IMG/VR virus record: IMGVR_UViG_3300049215_000771
Span: 248,001-312,000 of that record
Length of the DNA stretch: 64,000 bases
Direction: 5' to 3' (one strand)
Shown here piece by piece: positions 34,745 to 55,840 of the stretch; position 1 is the stretch's first letter, and each line of letters begins with the position of its first letter. Position numbers and translations under genes: made by a program. A model generated the notes under the pieces. It had not been told where the DNA came from, did no database searches, and was given only the letters and a program-made list of their open reading frames with translations.

Positions 34745-34747
34745 AAT

Positions 34748-39084: not shown

Positions 39085-39632
39085 AGAACTACTGGTTAGA
39101 CAGGAAAAAAAAGAAAGATTGCTACTGCGACAAATCCGACGAGGGAATGAGGAGGCGGGCAAAGTTGCAGACTGAGTACATGCGGCGTCGGATAGAACGC
39201 CTGCGAAACTTCACCAGGGCTTTGGCCACGGGCGGCTCGGTGGAGATCAATTGGGAAGCCATTGAGAAGGAGGAGCAGGAAGAAAAAATCAAGTTCGAGA
39301 TTCCTGAAATTCCGACCCCTGAAATTCCGCCAATCACAGTAATGTGGGACTTCAACACCCCGCCGCCTGAAATCAACATCCCGCCGATGGTATTCGGGAC
39401 CATCGACATCACTGGTACTGGAATAATGACTCAGATCGACATTTCGCCACCCGTCAATATACCGACTGAGATCAAACTGGTTGCTCCAGACCCGATGCCT
39501 GTCATCAAGGTGGAATGGGGTCTACCGCCTACCATTCCTTTGATAATCACGGATACGTCCGGGCCGATGGGGACCATGCCGTTGGACATTCCCAGCGTGA
39601 TTACGATAAACTCGCCGGAATACCGTATATAA
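39081..39632 (+). CDS. Mini-protein resembling the flanks of the 2048-aa fibre, with NYWLD leader
   Basis: ATGA coupling; NIPPMVF, PPVNIPTEI and VEWGLPPT match fibre NLPPIVF, PPINIPSEI and VNWGPAPT. Confidence 0.7.
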   Translation: MKNYWLDRKKKKDCYCDKSDEGMRRRAKLQTEYMRRRIERLRNFTRALATGGSVEINWEAIEKEEQEEKIKFEIPEIPTPEIPPITVMWDFNTPPPEINIPPMVFGTIDITGTGIMTQIDISPPVNIPTEIKLVAPDPMPVIKVEWGLPPTIPLIITDTSGPMGTMPLDIPSVITINSPEYRI

Positions 39633-39636
39633 CGAT

Positions 39637-40461
39637 ATGCCAGAACTTGATCTGTATCCAGTACCACTGTATAATCCACTGCACCCGTACCATTGGGAGT
39701 ACGACAACCTGCCGTTGCAGAATTTAATCCTTCGGGATGAAATCATCAACGGCCAGGTTGACTACAACTCAGGCATCTTGATGGATGCCGCTGGTACACA
39801 GGGCACATTGGCAAATCGGCTTGCGCAAAGCATCGACCCCAACGGCAGTCTCTTACTTGCCGCCGTCGATTCCGTGATGCACAACATAGCCGCTCACATT
39901 GACGGAACAGCCAATCTGTCTCCAACTGAGATTTCTTCTTTGGCGACACTTGGGTATGTTGTATCGAATCCAGTCCCGTATGTGAGAATGTTGAACGCAG
40001 AACGGGCCAAGCTATCCCTTATTGCTGATGAAGCAACGAACATGACGATTCAGGTGCAAACACCTTCTGTCACTGTTCTGTACACCCAGGGACCGATTAC
40101 CTTTGTTCCATCCGAAACAGTAACATGGTTCGTTTCAGGTAATCAGATACAGGCCAATTTGGGGTTCCCGATTGAAGCAGCACATCGTCACTACTACGAT
40201 CAGGAACCAGTAACGAGCGATTATCAGAACTATCAAACAACGTCGGTCAGCACACCATGTAGGGTGGGCACATTGCGAGTGTACATCAACGGCGTAAGAC
40301 TCAGTGAAACAGCAAACGTCTACGTTCCCTCAGCCATCATCTCGGCCCCGTGGACGCTGAACTCCTTCACGCCAAACGAAGAAGCTGGAACTTTCCAACT
40401 GGAAACTCCCATTACCGCCGCTGACATCATTCGCATCGACTTCGACATTGCTTTGACATAA
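39637..40461 (+). CDS. Tail/baseplate structural protein
   Basis: Beta-rich ORF in the tail operon; C-terminal LRVYINGVRL domain common in tail proteins. Confidence 0.6.
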   Translation: MPELDLYPVPLYNPLHPYHWEYDNLPLQNLILRDEIINGQVDYNSGILMDAAGTQGTLANRLAQSIDPNGSLLLAAVDSVMHNIAAHIDGTANLSPTEISSLATLGYVVSNPVPYVRMLNAERAKLSLIADEATNMTIQVQTPSVTVLYTQGPITFVPSETVTWFVSGNQIQANLGFPIEAAHRHYYDQEPVTSDYQNYQTTSVSTPCRVGTLRVYINGVRLSETANVYVPSAIISAPWTLNSFTPNEEAGTFQLETPITAADIIRIDFDIALT

Positions 40462-40479: not shown

Positions 40480-41019
40480 TTGAGCAATTTATTCACACAT
40501 AAGGACTTGAAGTGTGGGTTCATTATCTTGTGTTCGGAACACAACCCTGATCTTTTACGATACACAGTCCGATCAATTCAGATGCGCTACGGCGAAGCAC
40601 CCATCATCGCCGTAACTGACGCCGGGACAACAGATAACGAGATGAGGGAAATGAAAACATTTTGCCCTGTGTTTAAGGGCAAGAAAACTTTCACTTCCCT
40701 CATCAATGTTGGTTTCCAGCACACCCTGGCCGGTTGGAACTTCGTCGTCATGGCCGGCACAACCATGCGGGCCAGCCTGGATCGCAAAATGTCCTACTTT
40801 GTCAACAGCGAGAAGGACATTTTGTTTCCAATTGCCAACAACAAGTGGAATTTCGTGGAGGCGACCCTGAACGGCCTCCTAATTCACAAGAAAACCTTCA
40901 AGGAGGTCGGCGACATGCCAAACGAAGGCTCCCTGGAGATGGCAAAGGCAGAATGGGCACTGAACGCTGCTGACCGTGGCTGCACTTTCAAAGCCATCAT
41001 AGGAGCCAAACTTTGCTAG
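40480..41019 (+). CDS. Short GT-A (GT2-like) fold protein lacking an obvious DxD
   Basis: GFIIL..LRYTVRSI..IIAVTDA..SLINVGF..WNFVVMAG..NGLLIHKKTFKEVG..EWA.NA..G..F; TTG start. Confidence 0.45.
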   Translation: MSNLFTHKDLKCGFIILCSEHNPDLLRYTVRSIQMRYGEAPIIAVTDAGTTDNEMREMKTFCPVFKGKKTFTSLINVGFQHTLAGWNFVVMAGTTMRASLDRKMSYFVNSEKDILFPIANNKWNFVEATLNGLLIHKKTFKEVGDMPNEGSLEMAKAEWALNAADRGCTFKAIIGAKLC

Positions 41020-41567
41020 ACCAGGCCGTAGGTGAACGCCCAGCGGTCGTTATGGACATGCTTGCCCTTATTCACTTCGCATAGATATTCCCACAGCCCA
41101 TCCCAGCTACCGAACATGAACTCATGCGGGATGAAGCCATAATACCACAAGGGAATGAACTCCTTCCCCTGCGGACAAACCAGCATGGTCGGCTTCTTCG
41201 CATTGTTTGAGTTGATGATTTCGTGGTGCGTGCCGGTCGTCGGAACACCAGACGGCAGGTAGGCAATCGTGAAATCCGCCCGATCCACCATAGCCAAATC
41301 CTTCCGCACGAAGGCTTTGGCTATTTTCGTCATTGTTTCATAGTCCCTGTCGATCCTGGCTTGTTTCAGAACAGGAACCCACTGTTGCTTGGGATCGGCG
41401 AAAGGATCAAACAGCGTGATTTTGAAGGTTTCAACCAGCACCTTGCGAGGTTCATCCCGCCAGTTGTGCCCCTGGTTGTCGTTCTCAATAGGCCCGGAGA
41501 GGTAGCAGCGTTTTCCCTTCAATACCTTCTTGCGAGGCTTTGGCGGCATCAGGTCGATATTTTGCAT
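41016..41567 (-). CDS. Nucleoside 2-deoxyribosyltransferase / nucleotide N-hydrolase-like protein
   Basis: CYLSGPI..WR..LFDPF..DLAMVDRAD..YL..TTGTHHEI; start moved to MQNIDL (GAGGA RBS). Confidence 0.75.
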   Translation of the reverse strand: MQNIDLMPPKPRKKVLKGKRCYLSGPIENDNQGHNWRDEPRKVLVETFKITLFDPFADPKQQWVPVLKQARIDRDYETMTKIAKAFVRKDLAMVDRADFTIAYLPSGVPTTGTHHEIINSNNAKKPTMLVCPQGKEFIPLWYYGFIPHEFMFGSWDGLWEYLCEVNKGKHVHNDRWAFTYGLV

Positions 41568-41624
41568 GGCTTCCTCGTGATATAGAACTCTATTACAGGT
41601 AGGTTGTACCACACAGGAGAAAAT

Positions 41625-42305
41625 ATGTCAACACAACTCGAATCGGTGAATTTCATGTCGGATATTGACAAGGTACTGGAGGCAGAAGTCGCCCAGCGGC
41701 ACAGCTTCTTCCAACTCAAATACTTCGTCATTGGCAAAGAACCCACCCATCAGGCCCGCATGTGGCAGTGTATTCGTGAACTCAAAGCACGGCGGGAAGC
41801 CCTTGTTGCCCTTGAACTTGAGATCGAGGAGGGCAGGGATAACCTCGAACTGTCCGAGATGCAATTCGACGAGCATATCAATACGGACGATGTAGTGAAC
41901 AGGGACAAATATGCAGAACGACGGCGGCATATTATGGGCCGCAAACTGCTGCGTCAGGTGAATGCCGCCAAGAACAACCTGGCCCAGCTTGAGGACAAGA
42001 AGAAGTGGTTGTTACAGGAAGCGCAGTTCTTCCTGGAGTCGTTCAAGAACCTTGAGAAGATCGAGAAAATGAAGCCATTCGACGACTTGGATGCTCAGAA
42101 AGCATATTGGGGCGAGAAACTGGCGAACAAAATAAACCTCAAAATGTTGATGCAGAACCCTGTAGATACTGAACTGATCGAAACGGTCATCGCTTTGCCG
42201 GATGATATTCCCGTCAAACAAACGATGGTGAAGCGTCTGAACTCAATCCAGAACCAAATGCTTCTGCTCAAGGAAGAATATAAGAAGAAACTTGGGGCTG
42301 CATAA
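41625..42305 (+). CDS. Coiled-coil hypothetical protein
   Basis: AGGAG RBS; long heptad pattern. Confidence 0.65.
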   Translation: MSTQLESVNFMSDIDKVLEAEVAQRHSFFQLKYFVIGKEPTHQARMWQCIRELKARREALVALELEIEEGRDNLELSEMQFDEHINTDDVVNRDKYAERRRHIMGRKLLRQVNAAKNNLAQLEDKKKWLLQEAQFFLESFKNLEKIEKMKPFDDLDAQKAYWGEKLANKINLKMLMQNPVDTELIETVIALPDDIPVKQTMVKRLNSIQNQMLLLKEEYKKKLGAA

Positions 42306-42314
42306 AGGAGGAAT

Positions 42315-43367
42315 ATGGCTGTACAAAGGATTTCTTCCCTGGACCTGGGGTACTCGTCAGGTCAATTGTCGCTTTTTCCTTCAGCCTTGGACTCGGCATA
42401 TCAACTGTACAAAGCAGCCAACAACGCCGTAACCAAACTGAAGCAAACGATGACGTACAACGCAAAATACATCGTCGTTGAAGATACAACAGGCTTCCCG
42501 CCGAACGGCCTCATCAGAATCGGCCCACCACCCGGCCAACCGGGAAATTCCGAACTGATCTATTACGATCAGGTCACAACGGGTGTATTCCGTAATCTGA
42601 TCCGTGGTTTCGCCGGCTCCATCCAAGGCCAGTGGACTGTAGGAAGCTACGTCACCAACTCGGTGATGGCAGAACACCACAACTCCGTCAAGGATGCAGT
42701 CCTTCAGATGGAGGCCGATCTCGGTACGGAGGTTGATCCAACAGCCACGAGCCTGAATGGAATCCTGAAGTCGCAAGAAACTCGGTTCTTGTCACCCCAG
42801 GCTATCTTCAGGGCGTGGCCCCAAGCTGGTCCGCCTCCATTGCGTGTTCGTTTCCAAAACTTCAGCACCGGGCCAGTTATTCGATCCCTTTGGGATTTTG
42901 GTGATGGAACAACTTCTGTCGAGAAGTCGCCCATTCATACCTACTTAGCCGATGGTGTGTATACCGTCAGCTTAAACATCATTACTTTGCTTGGAGCGCA
43001 AGGGATCGTAACGAAAACAAACTACATAACCGTAGACCCAGGAGACAGACAACCTTTCTTCTATGTTACGCCTCAAACTGGTCTATCCGCTGCTACTGCG
43101 GCCAAGTTGAACGTACAACCAACAACATTCCAGTTTGTCGATCAAACAGATGGCGACATCTCCCAGCGCTACTGGATTTTCGACGGCAACGGAAAAATCA
43201 ATGGCGTAGAAGTAGCGAACCAAAGCCTCCCTGAAAACGATCCAAACATACACACGGCAACCTACGTTTATGACCTGCCTGGCAGCTACACCCCTTCGTT
43301 GTTGGTTTTGTTTGCCAACCAGGAGCTAAAAAGAGCCTACTTGTCAAGTACAATCACGGTGCAGTAA
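42315..43367 (+). CDS. PKD-domain tail fibre/baseplate protein
   Basis: SLWDFGDG..PIHTY..GVYTVSL PKD; HHN motif shared with the next two genes. Confidence 0.75.
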   Translation: MAVQRISSLDLGYSSGQLSLFPSALDSAYQLYKAANNAVTKLKQTMTYNAKYIVVEDTTGFPPNGLIRIGPPPGQPGNSELIYYDQVTTGVFRNLIRGFAGSIQGQWTVGSYVTNSVMAEHHNSVKDAVLQMEADLGTEVDPTATSLNGILKSQETRFLSPQAIFRAWPQAGPPPLRVRFQNFSTGPVIRSLWDFGDGTTSVEKSPIHTYLADGVYTVSLNIITLLGAQGIVTKTNYITVDPGDRQPFFYVTPQTGLSAATAAKLNVQPTTFQFVDQTDGDISQRYWIFDGNGKINGVEVANQSLPENDPNIHTATYVYDLPGSYTPSLLVLFANQELKRAYLSSTITVQ

Positions 43368-45628
43368 TGACAATCCCAAATGGAAGCAACTATCCAGCGG
43401 CATTGGACACAGACGACAATATGTTCCTTGTCCATGACTCGCTTCGTGTAACCCTTGCGCAAGATTACAACCCTGGCGACACATCCATTACTGTTTCCGG
43501 TGACTTGGAAACTATGTCCAGATTTCCGCCCACCGGCCTCATTACCCTTACCGAACAATGCAGCGACCCCAAACTACGGGCTATTTCTTTCTACTACAAA
43601 GCAACCGACAATCTTTCTACGTTTAGCGGCCTGGAATTGCTGGAAGGTTTCACGGATAATCCAAAACCTGCCCTTATCACAGACGTAACCCAAAACGTCA
43701 TGGATAAACATCACAACAGCATCAAAGATGCTGTAATAGCCATCCAGCAGTTCGCCGGCAAGAAAGGTGAAGTTGGCACTATTCCACTTGAAGGAACAAT
43801 GGAAGCCAGGATCAATTATCTGCGCAACCTCGTGCTGATTCCCAAGGCGTGGATGTCCGCCAACACAACAATCGGGCTGGTTCCATTCACTGTTGAGTTT
43901 ACCGACCAATCTTTCCGACTAGGAACGGATGGAACCTCCCATTCCATCACCCGAACCTGGGACTTCGGTGATAACAACGGACCATCGGAAATTACCATCT
44001 CGCAGACGGCCACTGGCCTCCCCTGCCCGTCACCAGACATTACGCCACCTGAAACGATCTCTCACACCTACACAACGCCCGGAATCTACGATGTGACGCT
44101 GACGATAACCAACGACTTCGGCTCAGATACAGTCGTATTTCCCAGCCTCATTAACGCCCGTGTGCCTGCTCCTGATTTTGCTGTGATAAATTTCACGCCA
44201 AGGTCGGGACAGATTTTCACGCCAGGCAGCCCAATTGGTGGGCCGTATATAACAACGCCAATCATTCGATCCCCTACCAACACCATCATCACACTCGACG
44301 TGCCACAGGGCATCAACGGAAACACAGGCGAGTCTTATGCTGGAGAAACATTGGATGGGGCTGGACATCCTATCGACCCGATTACAGCCTACACCTGGTC
44401 GCTGGCTGATGATTTGCAGCACAACAACTCCATGATGGCTAATGCCTCCTACAGCGTGGGCGGATTGTACGATCTAATCCTGCGTGTAGACACGGAATTC
44501 GGCGCATATCGCATCACAAAGTACCCGGCAGCCCTGGACATCGTTGAACGAGACAACTTATGGTTCTGGAGTTTCAGCAACATTCAGCAAGTGTACAGTT
44601 TTGAGTTTGGATTGTTCTCTGAGACGTTCAAAAACCGCTCTCAGGCAGCCCTGAACGTCAATTATAACGATTCCTTCCTGTCAGGAGCCGTCAACAGTGC
44701 CCAGCAGCTTCGGGAATTCCATCGCAACAATGGCTTCGCTCAACGTGGGTCTATCCAGTCTGGATTGGGCGGAACGGGTCTTTTGTATTGGGCGAGCGGC
44801 AGAAACGCCACAGATAGCCCCGCTTTGGAAACTATTCAGTTCAGCGAGTTCAACGGTTTCGCTGATACCTACACTGCTCGCTCCCCCATCAACCGCCCGT
44901 GGAATTGGGTGTCACTGGTATCGCAAAGCAAGATTTACTTTCTGCTAGGCGGGGTAACAACCCCTTCTTTGCCAAATACCTCGCCGACAAATCAGCGGCA
45001 AGACGCCCTCCTGCTATCGAACCTCAGCGTAGCTTCTGTCTCCTTTGGTAATTCAAACTACAAAAACGGAGCCAACGAGTTGATGCAGAACGAGGTAACT
45101 TACGACATCAGCGGCAATCCACTCCAGGGAAACATGAGCGTGTACAGGTCATGTTGGAAAGATAGCGCCGGCTATTTCCTTCGGAATGAAGGTACTGGTG
45201 CGTTCTTCAGGATGGCCGCTTTCTACAAAACAAACGGGAACACAACCGAGCCGTTCCAGTTTCTCTACAAACTGCCAGATATGGCAGGACCGGCAAAAGT
45301 GGAAGGTCAACTGGTAACACTGAGCCAAGGGGTGTTCTTCTTCAATAACTCCGGGTCGGTGTCGGCATACAACCCTACATCGGCAGTATGGGAAGTCGGT
45401 GGCCCTGGTGCAAACTCGGCGGCGTTTCGCTCCTTCCAGGATACGAATGTGCTTGATTTCGACGATCCAGCGAACACACTGCTGGCAACGTCTGACAACC
45501 AACAAGTAGCATATTTGAGCTACGACTACAGCACCAATGCTTTCATCAAATTCAATGCTGCGGACTTGACATTCAGCAGCGTGGTTGCGAGGCCAAGCGG
45601 GACGCAATGGCAGATGACAATCTTCTGA
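43367..45628 (+). CDS. PKD-domain tail fibre / putative receptor-binding protein
   Basis: HHN anchor, TWDFGD..SHTYTTPGIYDVTL PKD, C-terminal beta-propeller-like region. Confidence 0.75.
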   Translation: MTIPNGSNYPAALDTDDNMFLVHDSLRVTLAQDYNPGDTSITVSGDLETMSRFPPTGLITLTEQCSDPKLRAISFYYKATDNLSTFSGLELLEGFTDNPKPALITDVTQNVMDKHHNSIKDAVIAIQQFAGKKGEVGTIPLEGTMEARINYLRNLVLIPKAWMSANTTIGLVPFTVEFTDQSFRLGTDGTSHSITRTWDFGDNNGPSEITISQTATGLPCPSPDITPPETISHTYTTPGIYDVTLTITNDFGSDTVVFPSLINARVPAPDFAVINFTPRSGQIFTPGSPIGGPYITTPIIRSPTNTIITLDVPQGINGNTGESYAGETLDGAGHPIDPITAYTWSLADDLQHNNSMMANASYSVGGLYDLILRVDTEFGAYRITKYPAALDIVERDNLWFWSFSNIQQVYSFEFGLFSETFKNRSQAALNVNYNDSFLSGAVNSAQQLREFHRNNGFAQRGSIQSGLGGTGLLYWASGRNATDSPALETIQFSEFNGFADTYTARSPINRPWNWVSLVSQSKIYFLLGGVTTPSLPNTSPTNQRQDALLLSNLSVASVSFGNSNYKNGANELMQNEVTYDISGNPLQGNMSVYRSCWKDSAGYFLRNEGTGAFFRMAAFYKTNGNTTEPFQFLYKLPDMAGPAKVEGQLVTLSQGVFFFNNSGSVSAYNPTSAVWEVGGPGANSAAFRSFQDTNVLDFDDPANTLLATSDNQQVAYLSYDYSTNAFIKFNAADLTFSSVVARPSGTQWQMTIF

Positions 45629-45637
45629 GAAATAGGG

Positions 45638-45644
45638 CTAGATA
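45638..45644 (+). promoter_or_regulatory. Putative late-promoter motif CTAGATA
   Basis: 4 nt before ATG 45649. Confidence 0.45.
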
Positions 45645-45648
45645 GGGC

Positions 45649-48600: not shown

Positions 48601-51600
48601 ATTACGCCGGTAACGATTCCGACAACGATTACGATTACTCCAGTCACGATTCCGACAAAAATCACCATTACGCCGGTCAACATCCCGACGAACATCACCA
48701 TTACGCCGGTTACAATACCGACGAACATCACTATTACGCCGGTCAACATCCCGACGTTGATTACCATTACGCCGGTCACGATCCCGACGACAATTACCAT
48801 CACGCCGGTCACGATCCCGACAACAATCACCATTACGCCGGTCAACATCCCGACGTTGATTACCATTACGCCGGTCAACATCCCGACGTTGATTACCATT
48901 ACGCCGGTCACGATCCCGACTCAGATCACGTTCGGGCCAGTAACGATCCCGACTCAGATCACGTTCGGGCCAGTGACGATTCCGACTAAGATCACGATTA
49001 CACCGATCACGATTCCGGCAATCAGGATCACGCCGATCTCGATCCCGAATATCACGATTTCACCTGTAAACATCCCGACGACAATTACCATCACGCCGGT
49101 CAACATCCCGACAGCGATCACGATCACGCCAGTTGATATTCCGACAGCGATCACGATCACGCCAGTTGATATTCCGACAGCGATCACGATCACGCCAGTC
49201 AACATCCCAACGAACATCACCATTACGCCGGTCACGATACCGACAGCGATTACCATTACGCCGGTCACGATACCGACAAAGATTACCATTACGCCGGTCA
49301 ACATCCCGACGTTGATTGCGATCACGCCGGTCAACATCCCGACAAACATCACCATCACACCAGTTACGATCCCGACACGAATCACAATCACGCCGGTCAC
49401 GATCCCAACAGCGATCACGATCACGCCGGTCACGATCCCGACGACAATTACCATCACGCCGGTCAACATCCCAACAGCAATCACGATCACGCCGGTCAAC
49501 ATCCCGACTCAGATCACGTTCGGGCCAGTGACGATCCCGACTCAGATCACGTTCGGGCCGGTTACAATTCCGACCAAGATCACGATCACTCCGGTAACGA
49601 TCCCAAACATCAGGATCACACCGATCTCGATCCCGAACATCACGATTACTCCAGTTGATATTCCGACAGCGATCACGATCACGCCGGTCAACATCCCGAC
49701 AGCGATCACCATCACTCCAGTTGATATTCCAACAGCGATCACCATCACGCCGGTCAACATCCCGACAGCGATCACCATCACGCCGGTCAACATCCCGACA
49801 GCGATCACCATCACGCCGGTCACGATCCCGACGTTGATTACCATTACCCCTGTGATAATCCCGACGTTAATTACAATTACGCCGGTCACGATACCGACAA
49901 AAATCACCATCACGCCGGTCGCAATCCCGACGAACATCACCATTACACCGATCACGATCCCGACAGCGATCACTATTACGCCGGTTGATATTCCGACAGC
50001 GATCACTATTACGCCGGTCAACATCCCGACAGCGATCACTATTACGCCGGTCAACATCCCGACAGCGATCACGATCACGCCGGTCACGATCCCAACAGCG
50101 ATCACGATCACGCCGGTCAACATCCCGACAACAATCACCATTACGCCGGTCAACATCCCGACGTTGATTACCATTACACCAATTACAATCCCAACACAAA
50201 TTACGTTCGGACCAGTGACGATCCCGACTCAAATTACGTTCGGGCCAGTGACGATTCCGACTAAGATCACGATCACACCGATCACGATTCCGGCAATCAG
50301 GATCACGCCGATCTCGATCCCAAACATCATGATCTCGCCGATCTCGATACCGACAGTGATTACGATCTCGCCGGTCAATATCCCGACAGCGATCACGATC
50401 ACTCCAGTTGATATTCCGACAGCGATCACGATCACGCCAGTTGATATTCCGACAGCGATCACGATCACGCCGGTCACGATCCCAACAGCGATTACCATTA
50501 CGCCGGTCACGATCCCGACAGCGATTACCATTACGCCGGTCACGATACCGACAGCAATCACCATTACGCCGGTCAACATCCCGACGAGTATCACGATCAC
50601 GCCGATCACGATTCCTGCAATCACGATCACGCCGATCTCAATCCCGAATATCAACATTACGCCGATCTCGATCCCAGCGATCACGATCACACCGATCTCG
50701 ATCCCAGCGATCACGATCACACCGATCTCGATCCCAGCGATCACGATCACACCGATCTCGATTCCGAATGTGAACATCACGCCGATCACGATCCCAAATG
50801 TGAACATCACACCGATCTCGATCCCGGACATTAACATCACGCCGATCACGATCCCAAATGTGAACATCACACCGATCTCGATCCCGGACATTAACATCAC
50901 GCCGATCACGATTCCTGCAATCACGATCACGCCGATCTCGATTCCAGCAATCACGATCACACCGATCTCGATTCCGAATGTGAACATCACGCCGATCTCG
51001 ATACCGGACATCAATATCACGCCGATCACGATTCCTGCAATCACGATCACGCCGATCACGATCCCGGACATCAACATCACGCCGGTCACAATCCCGGACA
51101 TCAACGTGAATTGGGGACCAGCGCCAACAGTTACCTGCACGGTAACGGTGTCGTGTCCTTCTTCGCCGTCAACGACGCCATCTATGGGGTTCCTGGCGGG
51201 TGGGGTAGCTTTGCCGAGCGACTTCCAGGATGGCTTCTCACCGATTGAGGGAACGGTAGAGACAAGTGACATTGGCATTCCAACTGAAATTCAGTTGGTT
51301 GTGCCTGAAATCCCGGACATCCGAGTGATTCACGACATCCCGGCCATGATTGAGGTTGTGGCCCCGAAGATTCCGCCGATTGAGATCACGGGCTGGCAGA
51401 ACATCCCGAAGACCATCGAGGTCATTGCCACGGACATCCCGAAGACCATCGAGGTTGTGGGAGCGCACGCTATTCCGAAGTCGATCTCGATTGAGGGGGC
51501 GTCGAACATCCCAACCGTCATCAGGCTAGAAGTGCCTGTGGACTTCCCGAAGACGATTGTGCTGGACGCCAGCGGCATCCCGGACAAGATTCAAGTTGTC

Positions 51601-51795
51601 GGCATTCCGCCAGTCATTGAATTGATTGGCAACATCCCAACGGAAATCAAACTAACGATGCCTGAGAAACCGGAAGTAGAAATGGTATACAGGGGCGCTC
51701 CTATAGAGATGAAGATCAGCCTGGACACGAGCCGGCTGACAGGCGAGGATCAAAACGCCAACTGTGTAGCGATTGTCCCGTGCAAACCGAGCTAA
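45649..51795 (+). CDS. 2048-aa tail fibre-like protein with Ile/Pro/Thr repeat shaft
   Basis: HHN anchor plus PKD-like LDFGDG, about 1500 aa of 10-11-aa repeats, then a non-repetitive C-domain. Confidence 0.75.
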   Translation: MANGFPPVPVYPAGYDSDKTLYLVYNTAETVTTRDNAPWSEFIHIKPVDSDADEIWASNGFANIEGELFYYDAVGYDEFGKVNVLKRCARNLGGSHTVWNPQGSDVRGFVIAEHHNQLVEAILNTQGFIGYNFTNDCSTLDWRIRHLQALPIIDDDSNCPTIVLDVQVISQDPAQGTVIQYAILINGPYTGFRLDFGDGDFTTTATNGYHQYAANATIDPIVTIVNSNCSVVTSPIQRTIATEPAVGSALTPFEVTIPTIPSLPPIIFPNVIPPSNAFNLPPIVFPCLNIGPIGPINIPSIITVEPPINIPSEIFITPVTIPTEITITPITIPTEVVITPITIPTHITISPVTIPTLITITPVTISPIDIPTLIVITPVSIPTEIVITPVSIPTEIVITPVSIPTLITITPVNIPNVITITPITIPNIRITPISIPNITISPVSIPTVITITPVTIPTQITFGPVTIPTAITITPVTIPTAITITPVTIPTTITITPVNIPTNITITPVNIPTQITFGPVTIPTQITFGPVTIPTQITFGPVTIPTQITITPITIPNIRITPISIPNITISPVSIPTTITITPVNIPTVITITPFPCKIPSQITITPVTIPTNITITPISIPNINISPISIPTKITITPVTIPTTITITPVNIPTNITITPVDIPTNITITPVAIPTNITITPVNIPTLITITPVNIPTTITITPVTIPTQITFGPVTIPTQITITPITIPNIRITPISIPNITISPVSIPTTITITPVNIPTVITISPVNIPTNITISPVTIPTNITITPVTIPTKITITPVDIPTNITITPVNIPTLITITPVNIPTQITFGPVTIPTQITFGPVTIPTQITITPITIPNIRITPITIPNITITPVNIPTLITITPANIPTNITITPVNIPTNITITPVTIPTNITITPVTIPTKITITPVTIPTVITITPVTIPTVITITPVTIPTVITITPVDIPTAITITPVTIPTNITITPVTIPTTITITPVTIPTKITITPVNIPTNITITPVTIPTNITITPVNIPTLITITPVTIPTTITITPVTIPTTITITPVNIPTLITITPVNIPTLITITPVTIPTQITFGPVTIPTQITFGPVTIPTKITITPITIPAIRITPISIPNITISPVNIPTTITITPVNIPTAITITPVDIPTAITITPVDIPTAITITPVNIPTNITITPVTIPTAITITPVTIPTKITITPVNIPTLIAITPVNIPTNITITPVTIPTRITITPVTIPTAITITPVTIPTTITITPVNIPTAITITPVNIPTQITFGPVTIPTQITFGPVTIPTKITITPVTIPNIRITPISIPNITITPVDIPTAITITPVNIPTAITITPVDIPTAITITPVNIPTAITITPVNIPTAITITPVTIPTLITITPVIIPTLITITPVTIPTKITITPVAIPTNITITPITIPTAITITPVDIPTAITITPVNIPTAITITPVNIPTAITITPVTIPTAITITPVNIPTTITITPVNIPTLITITPITIPTQITFGPVTIPTQITFGPVTIPTKITITPITIPAIRITPISIPNIMISPISIPTVITISPVNIPTAITITPVDIPTAITITPVDIPTAITITPVTIPTAITITPVTIPTAITITPVTIPTAITITPVNIPTSITITPITIPAITITPISIPNINITPISIPAITITPISIPAITITPISIPAITITPISIPNVNITPITIPNVNITPISIPDINITPITIPNVNITPISIPDINITPITIPAITITPISIPAITITPISIPNVNITPISIPDINITPITIPAITITPITIPDINITPVTIPDINVNWGPAPTVTCTVTVSCPSSPSTTPSMGFLAGGVALPSDFQDGFSPIEGTVETSDIGIPTEIQLVVPEIPDIRVIHDIPAMIEVVAPKIPPIEITGWQNIPKTIEVIATDIPKTIEVVGAHAIPKSISIEGASNIPTVIRLEVPVDFPKTIVLDASGIPDKIQVVGIPPVIELIGNIPTEIKLTMPEKPEVEMVYRGAPIEMKISLDTSRLTGEDQNANCVAIVPCKPS
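46570..51110 (+). repeat. Tandem 33/30-bp repeat array
   Basis: Units IPTxITITPV(T/N/D), IPTQITFGPVT and IPxIxITPI(S/T); roughly 140 units from span divided by unit length. Confidence 0.95.
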
Positions 51796-51796
51796 G

Positions 51797-52663
51797 ATGA
51801 GAATCAAAAAAACCAAAGACAAAAACGAGTACCTGCTGACCAAGCAGGGTATGTGGGTTCGCAACTTCACCAAGAACCTGGTTCCGTTTGTTGATTTGAA
51901 CGAATCAGTAGACAAGAAAGATCATTTCATGCTACTGAAGAATGAAATAAACAACAATCGAGCCAGGTACACTTGGATTGACTCGGAGAAATTTTATCAC
52001 ACCAAGATGGTAATTGTTTCTGACGGATATGGATTCCAGGAGAAGCACAAACTGCTAGAGGATTTGCCCAAGGACGTGGCAATCATTGCCGTCCACGGGG
52101 CGCTCGCAAAATGGAACATCAACAGAAATCCAACCTACTACGTTGTCAACAACCCATATGAATTGTGCATGATGTACTTGCCACGCCGTCTGAGAAGTTT
52201 GCCAAAATGTATAGCTTCAACCAGAACAAATTACGAGTTCCTTGCTAACTACCGTGGCACCAGGTATCGGTACTTTCCTGTGAGTGGAAAGAATTATGCA
52301 GGGTCAAAAACCAGCGAAGCCCAATGGCAAATTGATGATTATCGCAATCCGATTTGTGCCGCCATAGGGCTTGCCTACCGCTTTGGGGTGGACAGGTTAG
52401 CGCTGCTGTGTTGCGATGATGTATTCAAAGATGAAAGGGTAGGATCGGAACAAATACACAACGGCATGTGGATTTACCCGCCTCAGTTGACGGCCCACGG
52501 GCTAATTGACGGTTGTTTGTACTGGCTAAGAAACACGCCATATCGAGATATGAAAGTTGTAGATCACAGTTCTGGCCCACTTTACGAGAATGCTGTGTAT
52601 ATAGAGAAGGACAATCTAGTGTCTTTCCTACAGGATGGAGTGTCTGATGACAAAAAGGAATGA
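51797..52663 (+). CDS. Maf/DUF115 (MptE-like) fold protein
   Basis: MVIVSDGYG..IIAVHGAL..PTYYVVNNP and NPICAAIGLAYRFGVDRLALLCCD; starts 1 nt after the fibre stop. Confidence 0.55.
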   Translation: MRIKKTKDKNEYLLTKQGMWVRNFTKNLVPFVDLNESVDKKDHFMLLKNEINNNRARYTWIDSEKFYHTKMVIVSDGYGFQEKHKLLEDLPKDVAIIAVHGALAKWNINRNPTYYVVNNPYELCMMYLPRRLRSLPKCIASTRTNYEFLANYRGTRYRYFPVSGKNYAGSKTSEAQWQIDDYRNPICAAIGLAYRFGVDRLALLCCDDVFKDERVGSEQIHNGMWIYPPQLTAHGLIDGCLYWLRNTPYRDMKVVDHSSGPLYENAVYIEKDNLVSFLQDGVSDDKKE

Positions 52664-52967
52664 CCACCAAGGGGATGAAAGGTTAAACCCTGCTTCATTT
52701 TCTTTGAGTGACTTCAAAAAATGGATGGAGAGCCAGCAGAAAGAAGAAGCCCCGAAGCCCAACCTAGTCGGCACCACGGTCGAATCCAGGATCAGCGTGC
52801 GCAAGCTCGTTGACCGGATGGACAGTGACGATGACTTGGAGGAACTAGCTAAAGACTTCAAGAAAAACGGCGGCGTAATCGCCGAAGTAGATGGTCACAG
52901 ATTGATGATCGAAGTGGATTCAGGAACTTTCATTATCCACCGAATGTTCGTCAAGCGTTGTGGCTAA
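52647..52967 (+). CDS. Hypothetical protein
   Basis: GGAG RBS; overlaps the upstream stop. Confidence 0.6.
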   Translation: MTKRNDHQGDERLNPASFSLSDFKKWMESQQKEEAPKPNLVGTTVESRISVRKLVDRMDSDDDLEELAKDFKKNGGVIAEVDGHRLMIEVDSGTFIIHRMFVKRCG

Positions 52968-53353
52968 TCTTTCCGCCTAACCATCGTTTGCACTTTTGGC
53001 AAATTACTTTGGACAGCCCGCTGGGGGTTAGAAAACAACCCGCCAAACAATTCAGGCTGCCCACTCACAGGCAGGCCAGAATACCCTCGCCGCTTCAAGC
53101 TGGTTTTCAAAGCATCATAAGTCGGGGCTGATTCAATCCAAGGTTCCCACATCATCCTGTCATCGGCGATGATTTTTGCAACCTGTGTGTACAAATTAGC
53201 TGGCAACTGAAGCACCTTCAAATCACTCACTCGTACCGGCGCTTGCTGCTGCCCGGTAAAAGTTGAAATCAGTCGCACGCCAGATTTATCTCGGCGGGCC
53301 AGGTAGAGGTACAAAGTCGCAGCCTGTGTTATTTTCTTCTTCATGTTTTTCAT
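52964..53353 (-). CDS. Hypothetical protein
   Basis: 129-aa ORF convergent with the 52647 gene. Confidence 0.55.
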   Translation of the reverse strand: MKNMKKKITQAATLYLYLARRDKSGVRLISTFTGQQQAPVRVSDLKVLQLPANLYTQVAKIIADDRMMWEPWIESAPTYDALKTSLKRRGYSGLPVSGQPELFGGLFSNPQRAVQSNLPKVQTMVRRKD

Positions 53354-53478
53354 CAGAGTTCATGCCATACAACTCTTCCAACAATACTTCCCAAAACACT
53401 CTTGTATAGATGTCATCCAAAGGCCCGAATTGATTGAAAAAATCACCAAGAGCTTCTATTCCTTTTTGAGAGTCTGTC

Positions 53479-54087
53479 ATGAGTGTACCTTTGCCCGAAT
53501 ATGTCAAAGTAAAAGACAAGTATTGCATCGCTTATTTTGGTCATTGCGATGATTACCTGGTTCAGTTGAAACTACTGCGTCCCATCATGGAAAAATCCTT
53601 CCCAGGAATCCATGTGTATATAGCCTGCAAAACCTCAGCTATGGAACACATGGAGGGTGAAGATAACGTAGTCAACATTGCCAACCCCAAAGACTATGGC
53701 TACTTCCGGGAGTTGCGGTGCGATATGGCCTCTCATCCCGTAGAAGCATTCATGAAAGAATCCGGCCTCCCATGCGGACCAGTTCGCATTAAACCATTTG
53801 CCACCAATTCCAAGAAGCGAGGAGTCATTGTACAAAATGGAATGCTTCCAACTCGGTCCCTCAGCATGGAACAAATCATCGCCGCCCGGAAATTCTTGTT
53901 CACCAAAGGCTGCTACAACATAGAAATGGACGGAAACATCAACGAGGCAGATGTAGTTTTGGGAGTCGAGTCGGCCAAATTGTTCCAAGCAGGAGCCAAC
54001 GGCGCTCAAGTGTTTTTGGTGCCAACGGGGTTTGGTGAAAATATCTTCAAATGTATGTACCCCAAAGGAACCATCATCAAATTATAG
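53479..54087 (+). CDS. Degenerate GT-B (GT9-like) fold protein
   Basis: YCIAYFGHCDDYL..LRPIMEKSFPGIHVYIAC and ADVVLGVESAKLFQA parallel the intact GT9 at 54857. Confidence 0.4.
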   Translation: MSVPLPEYVKVKDKYCIAYFGHCDDYLVQLKLLRPIMEKSFPGIHVYIACKTSAMEHMEGEDNVVNIANPKDYGYFRELRCDMASHPVEAFMKESGLPCGPVRIKPFATNSKKRGVIVQNGMLPTRSLSMEQIIAARKFLFTKGCYNIEMDGNINEADVVLGVESAKLFQAGANGAQVFLVPTGFGENIFKCMYPKGTIIKL

Positions 54088-54142
54088 CAGGTGGTGCATA
54101 TCTACTCCTGAAGACCAAAGATCGGCACCATCAAGGAGCATA

Positions 54143-54784
54143 ATGAGCGTATTTCAAGTCACTTTGAACAACATCGCCCAGGGTTACATGGATTTGAACC
54201 CTGCAACGGCGACCATGTACCAGGCTGACCTTTACAGCAACCTGGGCGCTGAAATGCAGCCATCTATCCAGAGGACGATTTACGTTGCTGGTCCGAACAG
54301 GACTTACCGTAAGTTGTACGACGGCCAGACTTTCACGGACTGCAACTACTGGAAGCGTTTCGCTTACCCACAAGTTCCTCTCGACCAGGCTTTCATCACC
54401 GTCATCACTGACGATGGTTCTGTTTGGAGCGATGTGGAGTCTGAGAACACTTACCCGAAGGTTTACAACGTCGCAGTCGCCAACGGCTCGACCTACACCA
54501 CGGGTTACAATGGTTCTACTTCTTCGGGTAACACCGTCAACATCCTGGGCGACACGGGTGGTTACGCCATCTTCGTTCAGATTGCCAACCAGTCTTCCAC
54601 GGCTGTCAAGGTTCAGTTGAATGGCATGTCCACCGCCATCTTCGACCTGGGCGCTGGCGAGACTCAGGTGTTCAACTCTGGCGAACTGTCGGTAACGATG
54701 ATTCAGTTCGCAAACACGGTATCTGGTGGCTCGACCGCCAACATCCAGGTACTCGTTTCCGTCAAGAGCGTCTGCAACAGCTAA
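54143..54784 (+). CDS. Probable abundant virion structural protein
   Basis: AAGGAG RBS, codons biased to GGT/AAC/TCT, beta-rich composition, own terminator. Confidence 0.6.
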   Translation: MSVFQVTLNNIAQGYMDLNPATATMYQADLYSNLGAEMQPSIQRTIYVAGPNRTYRKLYDGQTFTDCNYWKRFAYPQVPLDQAFITVITDDGSVWSDVESENTYPKVYNVAVANGSTYTTGYNGSTSSGNTVNILGDTGGYAIFVQIANQSSTAVKVQLNGMSTAIFDLGAGETQVFNSGELSVTMIQFANTVSGGSTANIQVLVSVKSVCNS

Positions 54785-54807
54785 AACTAGCTGGGCCTAA
54801 ACAAGAG

Positions 54808-54830
54808 AGCCGGGAGCAATCCCGGCTTTT
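54808..54830 (+). terminator. Rho-independent terminator
   Basis: agccggga-GCAA-tcccggct followed by TTT. Confidence 0.8.
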
Positions 54831-54856
54831 CTCGTTTCTGCATACTCCTTCAAGGT

Positions 54857-55840
54857 ATGCCAAAACTAATCAAACCCAAGGCTTACGCCGCAGTCCCGCT
54901 GGGCCTTTCTGACTTTTACAAAAAGCGCAACAAAGTGCTGATCTGGCATGAGAAAGGAGGGCTGGGCGATGTTTTCATGCAACGAATGATGTTCGACGAC
55001 TTGAAAGAAATAGCTCCGAACTGCGACCTAATTTTCGCTTGCCTGCCGGAATACTTTGATGCGGCCAGGGACCATCCAGCCATTTCTGAAGTAATCGACT
55101 CACGCTCAGTGAATCCGAAAGATTACGTCGCCTGCTACAACACATGCGTTACCATCGCCGACCGCTGTGAGAATTTCTACGCCCCAAACTGCAACGAACA
55201 TAGGGCTGACATATGGGCCAAGGTGCTGGGAGTTGAGTTAAAAACCCACGAGATGAACTTCCGACTCAATCCGAGGTTGGTTGCGACAGGTAAAACAAAA
55301 ATGGAGACGTTCAGGAGGTCGGGGCAACCATTGGTGGCTTTGGCCCCTGTAAGCAAAATGTCAACCAAGTCGTTGCTGCCAGAACAATTGGAAGCAATTG
55401 TAGAAGCTACGAGGGATTGCAGTCTGGTTGGGATACATAACCAGGAGGTCAGAGAACTTACGGCGTTGGGAGTGCCGGGTTTGTACAAATCGACCATTCA
55501 GGAATGGATGAGTTACATCAATGCTGCTGATTACGTCATCTCAGTTGATACAGCGGCTTTCCACTTGGCAGGCGGGTTGAAAAAACCATTGATGGGAATT
55601 TTTACTTTCGCTGACGGGAAAGTGTACGGCAAGTATTTTGACTTCATCCTGGTGCAGAAACACCGGGACAACGGAGATTGGGACTGCGGCCCCTGTTTCA
55701 AGTTCATCGACTGTCCTAAATGCAAATCTCTACCGAAACCTTGTTTGACTGAAATTACAGGCGAGATGCTGAGGGGTGGTGTGGAGAAAATGTTCCAGCG
55801 ATGGCCTCGTTACAGAACAGCCTTGCCAATACTCGTTTAG
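54857..55840 (+). CDS. Glycosyltransferase family 9 (heptosyltransferase-like)
   Basis: GGLGDV, HPAISEVI, ADYVISVDTAAFHLAGGLKKPLMGIF; Cys-rich C-terminal loop. Confidence 0.85.
   Translation: MPKLIKPKAYAAVPLGLSDFYKKRNKVLIWHEKGGLGDVFMQRMMFDDLKEIAPNCDLIFACLPEYFDAARDHPAISEVIDSRSVNPKDYVACYNTCVTIADRCENFYAPNCNEHRADIWAKVLGVELKTHEMNFRLNPRLVATGKTKMETFRRSGQPLVALAPVSKMSTKSLLPEQLEAIVEATRDCSLVGIHNQEVRELTALGVPGLYKSTIQEWMSYINAADYVISVDTAAFHLAGGLKKPLMGIFTFADGKVYGKYFDFILVQKHRDNGDWDCGPCFKFIDCPKCKSLPKPCLTEITGEMLRGGVEKMFQRWPRYRTALPILV

What the first reader, a model, noticed from the sequence alone, without database searches (positions are those of the whole stretch)
40480..55840. Candidate virion O-glycosylation system: four GT-like genes around a Thr/Pro-rich giant fibre
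Seen: a GT-A-like gene (40480), a Maf/DUF115-like gene starting 1 nt after the fibre stop (51797), a GT9-like gene (53479) and an intact GT9 (54857) all lie within the structural module, plus the HPAT-like gene at 4078. The fibre has hundreds of Thr in IPTxITITP units and the TMP has about 870 aa of Pro/Thr/Ala repeats. Established: Maf proteins glycosylate flagellin Ser/Thr, and some mycobacteriophages glycosylate virion proteins with their own GTs. Inference: a multi-step glycan is built on the fibre, which would also solubilise an otherwise almost charge-free shaft.
Basis: inference. Interest (0 to 1): 0.74.

Follow-up and report, generated by a model that had tools for sequence, protein, structure and literature searches.

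The report
Huge-phage tail fibre with coupled Maf-like glycosyltransferase
An uncultured 533-kb phage from a moss metagenome encodes a 2,048-residue tail fibre built from about 137 short beta-strand repeats. The fibre gene is always followed by a stripped-down relative of the enzymes that put sugars on bacterial flagellin, so the virion may be glycosylated, but the threonine-rich repeats are not shown to be the sugar acceptors.

Summary
All five genes flagged as glycosyltransferase-like (GT-like) have GT folds.
- 40480: GT-A fold, but the DxD motif is absent.
- 51797: matches the central domain of Maf (Z 21.6 to PDB 5MU5).
- 53479: compact GT9-like fold.
- 54857: true GT9, over the Pfam cut-off, Z 20-25 to GT9 structures, catalytic motifs kept.
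- 4078: HPAT-like fold, but it lies among non-structural genes.

The fibre has 457 Thr in about 137 units of 11 or 10 residues (IPTxITITPV[T/N]).

- Across related uncultured huge phages, the Maf-like gene followed the fibre gene in 42 of 42 complete loci, usually within 200 nt.
- Those fibres are 614-1,352 aa with only 5-13% Thr and different 11-mer repeats.
- The two GT9-like genes are missing from about a third of loci, with no relation to fibre length or Ser/Thr content.
- The repeat alternates Ile and Thr (Ile+Val+Thr = 55%), which marks a beta-structured shaft, not a mucin-like acceptor domain.
- The phage encodes no NeuB, CMP-sugar synthetase or GmhA, so any donors would have to come from the host.

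Most likely (about 0.4) the Maf-like enzyme O-glycosylates the fibre or a neighbouring virion protein. A fixed four-enzyme pathway tied to the Thr repeats is not supported. No glycan has been shown.

The parts
4078..5016 (-). HPAT-like GT-A-fold protein (312 aa); not in the structural module
   Evidence: Atlas TM 0.69-0.78 to PF23452 HPAT clusters. No Pfam hit. Neighbours are non-structural.
14499..28160 (+). Giant tape-measure-like ORF (4,553 aa) with a Pro/Thr/Ala-rich tail at about residues 3450-4500
   Evidence: Composition scan. Weak hits to phrog_305 (tape measure) and phrog_788 (tail protein).
28169..40461 (+). Contractile-tail baseplate genes (V/OB 30530, gp25 32744, gp6-like 33167, P2-I 34748, tail-collar-like 37843)
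40480..41019 (+). Small GT-A (GT2-like) fold protein, 179 aa, TTG start, without a DxD motif
   Evidence: Atlas feature score 0.96, TM 0.70-0.81. No Pfam hit. The DxD position reads xAG with Gly93 invariant; the only invariant acidic residue is Asp113. Present upstream of the fibre gene in 66 of 74 related loci.
41016..41612 (-). Nucleoside 2-deoxyribosyltransferase-like protein, convergent with the GT-A-like gene
   Evidence: PF05014 at 24 bits, below the cut-off. 57-69% identical in relatives.
42315..43367 (+). PKD-domain tail protein sharing its N-terminal domain with the next two genes
   Evidence: PKD_4 at 1.2e-14. Cross-hits among the three paralogues.
43367..45628 (+). PKD-domain tail protein (753 aa)
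   Evidence: PKD at 3.2e-11. Synteny.
45649..51795 (+). Tail fibre, 2,048 aa: conserved N-domain (about 1-290), about 137 repeats of 11 or 10 residues, a Ser/Thr/Pro linker, and a conserved C-domain with IPxxIxV repeats
   Evidence: Orthologues are 614-1,352 aa.
46774..51103 (+). 33-nt tandem array encoding the shaft repeats
   Evidence: TRF: period 33, 117-131 copies, 74-77% matches. GC skew about -0.33.
51797..52663 (+). Minimal Maf-type (DUF115/MptE-like, sialyltransferase-like GT-A variant) protein, 288 aa, 1 nt after the fibre stop
   Evidence: Follows the fibre gene in 42 of 42 loci.
52635..52967 (+). Conserved small protein of unknown function (about 100 aa)
   Evidence: Orthologues in L004-L006. 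No family hit.
52964..53353 (-). Conserved small reverse-strand gene of unknown function
53479..54087 (+). Compact GT9-like fold protein (202 aa)
   Evidence: Atlas TM 0.64-0.70 to PF01075 clusters. Invariant G21, H86-P87 and E164. Found in 15 of 22 loci; truncated in LR756511.1.
54146..54784 (+). Conserved beta-rich 212-aa protein with no known family; it gave the deepest metatranscriptome contigs in this stretch
54805..54830 (+). Terminator-like hairpin (11-bp stem followed by a T run) right after the 54146 gene
54857..55840 (+). GT9-family GT-B glycosyltransferase (327 aa) with a conserved C-terminal four-Cys cluster

Best explanation
Positions 40480-55840 hold the distal tail-fibre module of an uncultured 533-kb contractile-tailed phage.

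Structure of the module. Three consecutive proteins share an N-terminal domain. The last is a 2,048-aa fibre whose shaft is about 137 repeats of an amphipathic beta-strand unit. In that unit Ile and Val point inward, Thr points outward, and there are two Pro per unit. The number and sequence of these repeats vary freely between relatives. This suggests the repeats set fibre length and are not a dedicated sugar-acceptor array.

The coupled enzyme. The gene placed 1 nt after the fibre stop encodes a minimal Maf-type transferase. It corresponds to the central catalytic domain of the flagellin O-glycosyltransferase Maf, without Maf's flanking domains.

Most likely mechanism (inferred, not shown). 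This enzyme O-glycosylates Ser/Thr of a virion protein in the cytoplasm before assembly. The fibre is the most probable target because of the conserved adjacency. The phage lacks NeuB, a CMP-sugar synthetase and GmhA, so the enzyme would use a host-made CMP-activated ulosonic or nonulosonic acid. The GT9 enzyme and the compact GT9-like protein are accessory. They may extend that glycan or modify another target. One candidate target is the well-transcribed beta-rich protein encoded between them.

Shown here: the folds, the motifs, the gene order and its conservation, and the absence of donor-synthesis genes. Inferred: the substrate, the donor and the catalytic activity.
For: - Maf fold: model pLDDT 91; 5MU5 is the top match with Foldseek E 4.9e-7 and VIA Z 21.6 over Maf residues 192-517; the next match, MptE HPPK, scores Z 14.8. 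PF01973 is the only Pfam family hit, in 17 of 30 members.
- Enzyme-like conservation: invariant polar residues D76, N118, N119, S141, R143, T144, D180, D181, R183 and N184 across 30 sequences of 43-73% identity.
- Coupling to the fibre: a 1-nt gap and no + strand terminator-like site between the genes. The Maf-like gene follows the fibre gene in 42 of 42 complete related loci, within 200 nt in 34. The same order is seen on contigs of 109-670 kb and in LR756511.1.
- GT9: above the Pfam cut-off. The GD and VDT motifs align with WaaC D13 and D261-T262 and are invariant in 23 orthologues. Z 20-25 to GT9 structures, including the protein heptosyltransferase TibC.
- Precedents: Maf enzymes O-glycosylate flagellin Ser/Thr and can use CMP-Kdo or CMP-Neu5Ac (bioRxiv 10.1101/2020.06.03.131540). 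TibC heptosylates a beta-helical autotransporter encoded next to it (PMC4358343). Mycobacteriophage virions are glycosylated (Freeman 2023, as cited in PMC12619734).
- The phage is rich in glyco-genes elsewhere: seven GT2 hits, a GT2+GT9 fusion, an epimerase/dehydratase and a sugar-1-phosphate nucleotidyltransferase.
Against: - No glycan has been observed, and no cultured relative exists.
- The predicted complex of the Maf-like protein with fibre residues 1690-2048 gave no answer (score 0.00).
- The Maf-like protein scores below the Pfam cut-off and lacks Maf's N- and C-terminal domains.
- The fold is shared with pyrophosphokinases (MptE, thiamin pyrophosphokinase) and with SteA.
- No NeuB, CTP_transf_3 or GmhA gene is present in the genome.
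- The whole module is syntenic in this clade, so adjacency alone may reflect inherited gene order. Eight loci carry 830-1,025 nt between the two genes.
- A gene just downstream of a fibre gene is classically an assembly chaperone.
- Non-structural genes (a deoxyribosyltransferase-like gene, an actin-like gene) are interleaved with the module, so position does not prove a virion target.
Confidence: 0.4

Rival explanations
1. The GT-fold enzymes are active, but the fibre is not their substrate. They may remodel host envelope glycans during infection (LPS core or capsule; GT9 enzymes are classically LPS heptosyltransferases). They may modify another phage product, such as the well-transcribed 54146-54784 protein. 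The GT-A-like gene, paired with the deoxyribosyltransferase-like gene, may act on nucleotides or DNA. On this reading the Thr-rich shaft is purely structural.
For: - The GT9 and small GT9-like genes are absent from 7-8 of 22 loci, with no relation to fibre length or Ser/Thr content.
- They flank the 54146 gene, not the fibre gene.
- That gene gave the deepest metatranscriptome contigs in the stretch (depth 6-14, against 0-4 for most of the rest) and has its own terminator-like hairpin.
- The closest solved GT9 structures include the LPS enzymes WaaC and WaaF at about the same Z as TibC.
- The GT-A-like gene is convergent with a strongly conserved Nuc_deoxyrib_tr-like gene.
- Many further GT genes lie elsewhere in the genome.
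Against: - The Maf fold is known only from protein (flagellin) glycosyltransferases and from small-molecule kinases, not from LPS or DNA enzymes.
- The Maf-like gene is linked to the fibre gene in 42 of 42 loci.
- None of these proteins is a known DNA glycosyltransferase family.
Confidence: 0.33
2. The Maf-like protein is a catalytically dead scaffold that serves as a fibre-specific assembly or folding factor. This is the usual role of the gene just after a tail-fibre gene. No glycosylation takes place.
For: - Its position and apparent translational coupling.
- It lacks Maf's flanking domains and scores below the Pfam cut-off.
- No donor-synthesis genes are present.
Against: - Ten invariant polar residues are conserved across 43-73% identical homologues, which is more typical of an active site.
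- The complex prediction did not support binding, although that result is not evidence either way.
Confidence: 0.12
3. The Maf-like protein is an MptE/thiamin-pyrophosphokinase-type small-molecule kinase that has nothing to do with the virion.
For: The second-best structural matches are the archaeal HPPK MptE (Z 14.8) and thiamin pyrophosphokinases (Z 8-9). The Pfam family is named after MptE.
Against: - Maf scores clearly higher (Z 21.6, with 246 residues aligned against 194).
- There is no folate or thiamin gene context.
- The gene is strictly linked to a fibre gene.
Confidence: 0.05

Closest known systems
Maf (motility accessory factor) flagellin O-glycosyltransferases; structure 5MU5 from Magnetospirillum magneticum; PF01973
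   Same: The central GT-A-variant, sialyltransferase-like domain matches (Z 21.6, 246 residues, Maf 192-517). The gene lies next to the gene of a filamentous, self-assembling surface protein.
   Different: The protein is 288 aa against about 630 aa, with neither flanking domain. It scores below the Pfam cut-off. The genome has no nonulosonic-acid synthesis or CMP-activation genes. The neighbour is a phage fibre, not flagellin. The catalytic residues were not mapped.
GT9 heptosyltransferases: WaaC and WaaF (LPS core) and the autotransporter heptosyltransferase TibC (BAHT family)
   Same: 54857 is above the Pfam GT9 cut-off. It has a GT-B fold with Z 20-25. The GD and DT motifs are conserved. 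Like TibC, it has four conserved Cys late in the C-lobe, and it is encoded near a long beta-repeat protein.
   Different: It has no N-terminal beta-barrel. The Cys spacing is CxxC-x5-C-x9-C, against C339, C342, C358 and C370 in TibC (PMC4358343). It is not adjacent to the fibre gene. It is absent from about a third of related loci. The donor is unknown, and the phage has no ADP-heptose genes.
Mycobacteriophage virion glycosylation (Freeman et al. 2023, as summarised in PMC12619734)
   Same: Phage-encoded glycosyltransferases lie beside structural genes, and a virion protein is the proposed target.
   Different: Those systems modify C-terminal extensions of capsid and tail-tube subunits in siphophages of Gram-positive-type hosts. 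Here the enzymes are of Maf and GT9 type, the candidate target is a fibre, and nothing has been shown experimentally.
Triple-stranded beta-helix or beta-solenoid fibre shafts, and TxT-faced beta-helices (general structural knowledge, not tested here)
   Same: A short repeat with alternating inward hydrophobic and outward Thr residues, an almost uncharged surface, and a variable copy number that sets length.

Membership tests
Maf / DUF115 (PF01973) protein glycosyltransferases | Central Maf_flag10/MptE-like domain | tested here: met
   Fold: 5MU5 is the top match (Z 21.6; Foldseek E 4.9e-7). Sequence: PF01973 at E 7.8e-5 but 23 bits, below the 34.6-bit cut-off; 17 of 30 members hit it. The feature is met at fold level and is sub-threshold at sequence level.
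Maf / DUF115 (PF01973) protein glycosyltransferases | Three-domain architecture (about 600+ aa) with N- and C-terminal domains flanking the catalytic domain | tested here: not met
   The protein is 288 aa, and the model aligns only to Maf residues 192-517.
Maf / DUF115 (PF01973) protein glycosyltransferases | Catalytic acidic residues (E324 and D415 of M. magneticum Maf) and a conserved Ser | tested here: inconclusive
   D76, D180, D181 and S141 are invariant. No residue-level superposition on 5MU5 was available.
Maf / DUF115 (PF01973) protein glycosyltransferases | Genomic association with nonulosonic-acid synthesis and CMP activation | tested here: not met
   No NeuB (PF03102) and no CTP_transf_3 (PF02348) in the 533-kb genome.
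CAZy GT9 (gene 54857) | PF01075 at or above the gathering score, and a GT-B fold closest to GT9 structures | tested here: met
   26.6 bits against a 22-bit cut-off. Z 20.5-24.6 to 3TOV, 4RAP, 1PSW and 2H1H; other GT-B folds score 12.4 or less.
CAZy GT9 (gene 54857) | N-terminal GD (WaaC D13) and C-lobe D-T (WaaC D261-T262) motifs | tested here: met
   The profile alignment to WaaC pairs the motifs. G37-D38 and D231-T232 are invariant in 23 orthologues.
CAZy GT9 (gene 54857) | Use of ADP-heptose as donor | not testable with these tools
   The phage has no GmhA, so any such donor would have to come from the host.
BAHT autotransporter heptosyltransferases (TibC/Aah) | N-terminal beta-barrel domain | tested here: not met
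   The protein is 327 aa. In the model the Rossmann strand starts at residue 26 after a single helix. The TibC barrel spans residues 1-97 (PMC4358343).
BAHT autotransporter heptosyltransferases (TibC/Aah) | Four-Cys iron finger inserted in the C-lobe | tested here: inconclusive
   C280, C286 and C296 are invariant and C277 is conserved in at least 90% of orthologues. The spacing differs from TibC, and model confidence is lower there (pLDDT 69-75).
CAZy GT9 (gene 53479) | Pfam GT9 match, and a full two-lobe GT-B fold | tested here: inconclusive
   No Pfam hit. Atlas TM is 0.64-0.70 to GT9 clusters over 178-196 of 202 residues. The protein is too short for a complete GT-B. A GVE motif stands in place of the GT9 D-T/S motif.
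GT-A / GT2 (gene 40480) | GT-A fold | tested here: met
   Atlas features score 0.96, and all ten best hits that carry a Pfam family belong to the GT2 clan. TM is 0.70-0.81.
GT-A / GT2 (gene 40480) | DxD metal and nucleotide-sugar binding motif | tested here: not met
   The position reads MAG, AKG or AGG, with G93 invariant. D113 is the only invariant acidic residue among 25 orthologues.
HPAT / GT95 (gene 4078) | HPAT fold and Pfam PF23452 | tested here: inconclusive
   TM 0.69-0.78 to HPAT clusters, but no Pfam hit at E up to 0.1.
Mucin-like Pro/Thr/Ser O-glycosylation domain | Low-complexity, disordered, hydrophobic-poor Pro/Thr/Ser composition | tested here: not met
   The fibre is 25% Ile and 8% Val, in strict alternation with Thr (I-T-I-T).

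The most novel reading that the evidence does not exclude
A clade of huge phages uses a minimal Maf-type transferase, helped in some lineages by GT9 heptosyltransferases, to build an O-linked glycan resembling the LPS inner core (Kdo, then heptose) on its tail fibre. It would do this entirely from host CMP-Kdo and ADP-heptose pools. This would be the first Maf-type glycosylation of a virus particle and a form of surface mimicry. A second layer is possible. The HPAT-like gene, together with a prolyl-hydroxylase-like gene elsewhere in the genome, could add plant-style hydroxyproline glycans to the Pro-rich tail of the 4,553-aa tape-measure-like protein.
Probability: 0.07. Interest if true: 0.85.

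Novelty: new variant of a known kind. Interest (0 to 1): 0.55.

Why it matters
Virion glycosylation by phage-encoded enzymes has been shown experimentally only in a few mycobacteriophages. Maf-type enzymes are known only from flagellar systems.

A Maf-core enzyme tied to the tail-fibre gene across a widespread, uncultured clade of 0.5-0.7 Mb phages would extend both fields. It would also offer a compact 288-aa protein O-glycosyltransferase for glyco-engineering. Fibre glycans would bear on host recognition and on how such large particles behave in their environment.

Independently of glycosylation, the fibre is a clean natural example of length variation through copy number of an 11-residue beta repeat (614 to more than 2,048 aa). 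About 45% of related contigs break inside this gene, so long-fibre variants are systematically under-assembled in short-read metagenomes.

Tried and rejected
Searches that found nothing:
- Sequence searches of the PDB with the Maf-like protein, alone and as 5- and 30-sequence profiles. Only structure comparison found Maf.
- Pfam, PHROGs and NCBIfam on the fibre N-domain, a repeat piece and the C-domain, and on 40480, 53479, 54146 and 4078.
- A PDB profile search for the 54146 protein.
- Megablast of 20 kb against cultured and deposited phages. In protein mode only LR756511.1, an unannotated 595-kb uncultured phage, matched.
- The first locus search with a single sequence; an alignment was needed.

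Predictions that failed or could not be run:
- The predicted complex of the Maf-like protein with the fibre C-terminal 359 residues scored 0.00 with the fibre part at pLDDT 42. The tool states this is no evidence either way.
It was rebuilt without that row.

Ideas considered and rejected:
- A mucin-like reading of the repeat, rejected on composition and alternation.
- BAHT membership for the GT9 protein, rejected because it has no beta-barrel.
- Repeat collapse as an assembly artefact, rejected because the DNA units are only 71-77% identical and differ at synonymous sites.
- Reverse-strand ORFs inside the fibre gene (for example 50229-51278), which are by-products of a stop-free repeat.

Full report
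ORIGIN AND CONTEXT

The window is bases 248001-312000 of a single 532,729-bp virus record that is rated complete. DNA runs from moss metagenomes hold the stretch at 100% of sampled words. No cultured or annotated phage matches it. The only deposited relative is LR756511.1, an unannotated 595-kb 'uncultured phage'.

Upstream of the finding lie a 4,553-aa tape-measure-like ORF (14499-28160) and a contractile-tail baseplate. The giant ORF has weak PHROG tape-measure and tail hits, and its residues about 3450-4500 are Pro/Thr/Ala-rich. The baseplate includes V/OB, gp25, gp6-like, P2-I and a tail-collar-like protein.

THE FIBRE

ORF 45649-51795 encodes 2,048 aa with 457 Thr, 506 Ile, 340 Pro and 168 Val. 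It has four parts:
- an N-terminal domain of about 290 aa;
- a shaft;
- a short Ser/Thr/Pro linker;
- a C-terminal domain of about 230 aa with looser IPxxIxV repeats.

The N-terminal domain is also found, at 25-30% identity, at the start of the two preceding PKD-domain proteins 42315 and 43367.

In the shaft, 'IP' recurs every 11 residues 106 times and every 10 residues 30 times. The unit consensus is I-P-T-x-I-T-I-T-P-V-(T/N). Positions 4 and 11 are variable, and Thr is nearly fixed at positions 3, 6 and 8. Residues 291-1810 carry only 39 charged residues.

The DNA array has a 33-nt period and about 131 copies, and is only 74-77% self-similar. Units are 75% identical as protein and 71% as DNA, and identical residues share a codon only 53% of the time. 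The array is therefore genuine, old, and selected at the peptide level.

Strict Ile/Thr alternation, and 55% beta-branched residues, indicate amphipathic beta-strands broken by two Pro per unit. This fits a beta-helix or solenoid-type shaft whose outer face is a ladder of Thr hydroxyls. It is enough to reject a mucin-like, disordered acceptor domain. It also removes the need for glycans to keep an uncharged shaft soluble.

THE GT-LIKE GENES

- 40480 (179 aa) has no family hit. It sits among GT2 clusters in the ESM Atlas (feature score 0.96; TM 0.70-0.81). Its DxD position reads xAG with an invariant Gly, and only one acidic residue (D113) is invariant in 25 orthologues. A canonical metal-dependent GT2 mechanism is therefore doubtful.
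- 51797 (288 aa) hits PF01973 weakly (23 bits, below the cut-off), as do 17 of 30 homologues. Its model, built on a 30-sequence alignment, has pLDDT 91. The model's best solved match is the Maf glycosyltransferase 5MU5 (Foldseek E 4.9e-7; VIA Z 21.6 over Maf residues 192-517). That is well ahead of the MptE kinase (Z 14.8), SteA (about 11), thiamin pyrophosphokinases (8-9) and sialyltransferases (about 7-8). It is therefore the catalytic core of Maf without Maf's two flanking domains. Ten polar residues are invariant across homologues of 43-73% identity.
- 53479 (202 aa) has no Pfam hit but matches GT9 clusters structurally (TM 0.64-0.70). It is too short for a full GT-B fold.
- 54857 (327 aa) is a real GT9. 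It scores above the Pfam cut-off and WaaC is its best PDB profile hit. Its model has pLDDT 90.5, with Z 24.6 to 3TOV, 22.2 to TibC, 22.2 to WaaF and 21 to WaaC, against 12.4 or less for other GT-B folds. The WaaC-equivalent GD and D-T motifs are invariant. It also carries a conserved CxxC-x5-C-x9-C cluster. This recalls the TibC iron finger (C339, C342, C358, C370; PMC4358343). However, the protein lacks the TibC beta-barrel, so it is not a BAHT by architecture.
- 4078 (312 aa, reverse strand) resembles HPAT-type GT-A proteins (TM 0.69-0.78). It lies among a tRNA synthetase, a phosphatase, a SprT-like protein and a PolyA_pol/CCA-type enzyme, so it is not part of the structural module.

COMPARATIVE TEST OF THE INTERPRETATION

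The gene order is the same in LR756511.1 and in three IMG/VR contigs. It is also the same on contigs of 109-670 kb found through Maf-like homologues. The order runs: baseplate, GT-A-like, deoxyribosyltransferase-like (reverse strand), unknown, PKD, PKD, fibre, Maf-like, small, small (reverse strand), GT9-like, beta-rich protein, GT9, actin-like.

Seeding with the fibre N-domain gave 80 further loci.
- 76 of them carry the fibre gene.
- In 34 the contig ends inside the fibre, which marks assembly breaks in repeats.
- In 42 the fibre is complete, at 614-1,352 aa with 5-13% Thr.
- The Maf-like gene follows in 42 of 42, within 200 nt in 34 and after an insert of 830-1,025 nt in 8.
- Among 22 non-identical loci with at least 7.5 kb downstream, the counts are: Maf-like 22, beta-rich protein 20, small GT9-like 15, GT9 14.
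- Loci with and without GT9 have the same mean fibre length (693 against 723 aa) and Ser+Thr content (13% against 14%).
- These absences rest on tblastn at 1e-5, so very divergent copies could have been missed.
- In LR756511.1 the small GT9-like gene is reduced to 102 aa.

The shafts of relatives are also built of 10/11-residue units, but with other sequences: FDCISFCxPPS, IPTKIEFGPAP, TIPQITFGPAP, IPTMISFTPPN, IIIDPPIPPT and VVGLSNTTMQ. The only recurring hydroxyl is the Ser or Thr after 'IP', plus a 'CP(S/T)...TP' linker before the C-domain.

So the Maf-like enzyme is a core partner of the fibre gene whatever the shaft looks like. The GT9 pair is accessory. The Thr-rich unit is a lineage-specific shaft variant, shared with the 74%-identical relative L005.

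DONORS

The genome has no NeuB, no CMP-sugar synthetase and no GmhA. It does encode, 60-85 kb away, a GT2+GT9 fusion, an epimerase/dehydratase, a TPR protein whose reading frame also holds the weak GT9 match, and a sugar-1-phosphate nucleotidyltransferase. Six further GT2-like hits lie elsewhere in the genome.

A Maf-type enzyme would therefore depend on host CMP-activated sugars. Maf enzymes have been shown to accept CMP-Kdo and CMP-Neu5Ac (bioRxiv 10.1101/2020.06.03.131540).

EXPRESSION

In four metatranscriptome runs, the deepest and longest assembled contigs over 51100-56000 cover 54121-54795. This is the 212-aa beta-rich protein between the two GT9-like genes, at depth 6-14. Short, shallow contigs lie in the Maf-like gene, in the GT9-like gene and just upstream of the actin-like gene.

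A strong terminator-like hairpin follows that gene at 54805-54830. No + strand terminator-like site separates the fibre and Maf-like genes.

Contigs show presence, not absence, and DNA carry-over cannot be excluded. Even so, the uneven pattern suggests an abundant product, possibly a virion component and an alternative GT target. It matches no known family.

VERDICT

The best-supported reading is a tail-fibre module with a fibre-coupled minimal Maf-type transferase. This enzyme probably O-glycosylates the fibre or a neighbouring virion protein using host donors, and accessory GT9 enzymes are present in some lineages (confidence about 0.4).

The rivals are these:
- GTs acting on other targets such as the host envelope, the 54146 protein or nucleotides (0.33).
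- A non-catalytic chaperone role for the Maf-like protein (0.12).
- A kinase function for the Maf-like protein (0.05).

The direct test I could run, a predicted complex of the Maf-like protein with the fibre, gave no answer.

The specific proposal is not supported by the comparative data: a four- or five-enzyme pathway decorating hundreds of shaft threonines to solubilise the shaft. It is also not excluded.

Noticed in passing
window 54146-54784 (+), with the hairpin at 54805-54830: A conserved 212-aa beta-rich protein with no known family lies between the two GT9-like genes. It gave the deepest metatranscriptome contigs within 51100-56000 in four runs and is followed by a strong terminator-like hairpin. 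It may be an abundant virion protein and an alternative glycosylation target.
   Followed up: partly
window 56091-57095 (+): An actin-like protein of the Volactin family (PF25216, E 1e-72). It is 60-89% identical in relatives and always lies just downstream of the GT9 gene.
   Followed up: no
window 41016-41612 (-): A nucleoside 2-deoxyribosyltransferase-like gene (PF05014, 24 bits, below the cut-off) sits inside the tail module, convergent with the GT-A-like gene. At 57-69% identity across distant relatives, it is more conserved than the neighbouring tail proteins (27-51%).
   Followed up: partly
window 4078-5016 (-); G000:C1:460471-460707 (-); window 24850-28000: There is an HPAT-like GT-A protein in the window, a prolyl-hydroxylase-type 2OG-Fe(II) oxygenase elsewhere in the genome (PF13640, 44 bits), and a Pro-rich tail of about 1,000 aa on the giant tape-measure-like protein. 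Together these are the ingredients of hydroxyproline O-glycosylation, which is unusual for a phage.
   Followed up: partly
G000:C1:369000-396000 (loci L089, L090): A second cluster of glyco-genes: a GT2+GT9 fusion (673 aa), an epimerase/dehydratase, a TPR protein whose reading frame also holds the weak GT9 match, and a sugar-1-phosphate nucleotidyltransferase. A subtilase, a phiEco32-like COOH-NH2 ligase and NAMPT lie nearby.
   Followed up: partly
window 14499-28160 (+): A 4,553-aa tape-measure-like ORF with hydrophobic segments (about residues 1200-1800) and internal repeats of the GWYKWVFTGMA type. If it sets tail length in the usual way, the tail would be exceptionally long.
   Followed up: partly
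window 120-1673 (-) and 8320-10047 (-): A phage-encoded class II aminoacyl-tRNA synthetase (Asp/Lys/Asn type, E 1.9e-74) and a protein with a PolyA_pol/CCA-adding head domain.
   Followed up: no
loci L009-L088: 34 of 76 related contigs end inside the fibre repeat zone. Short-read assemblies break there, so fibres as long as this one are probably more common in the clade than complete loci suggest.
   Followed up: yes
window 58042-58506 (+): A 154-aa protein made of two tandem copies of a ~75-aa unit (internal duplication). It is conserved in relatives, some of which appear to hold a single copy.
   Followed up: no
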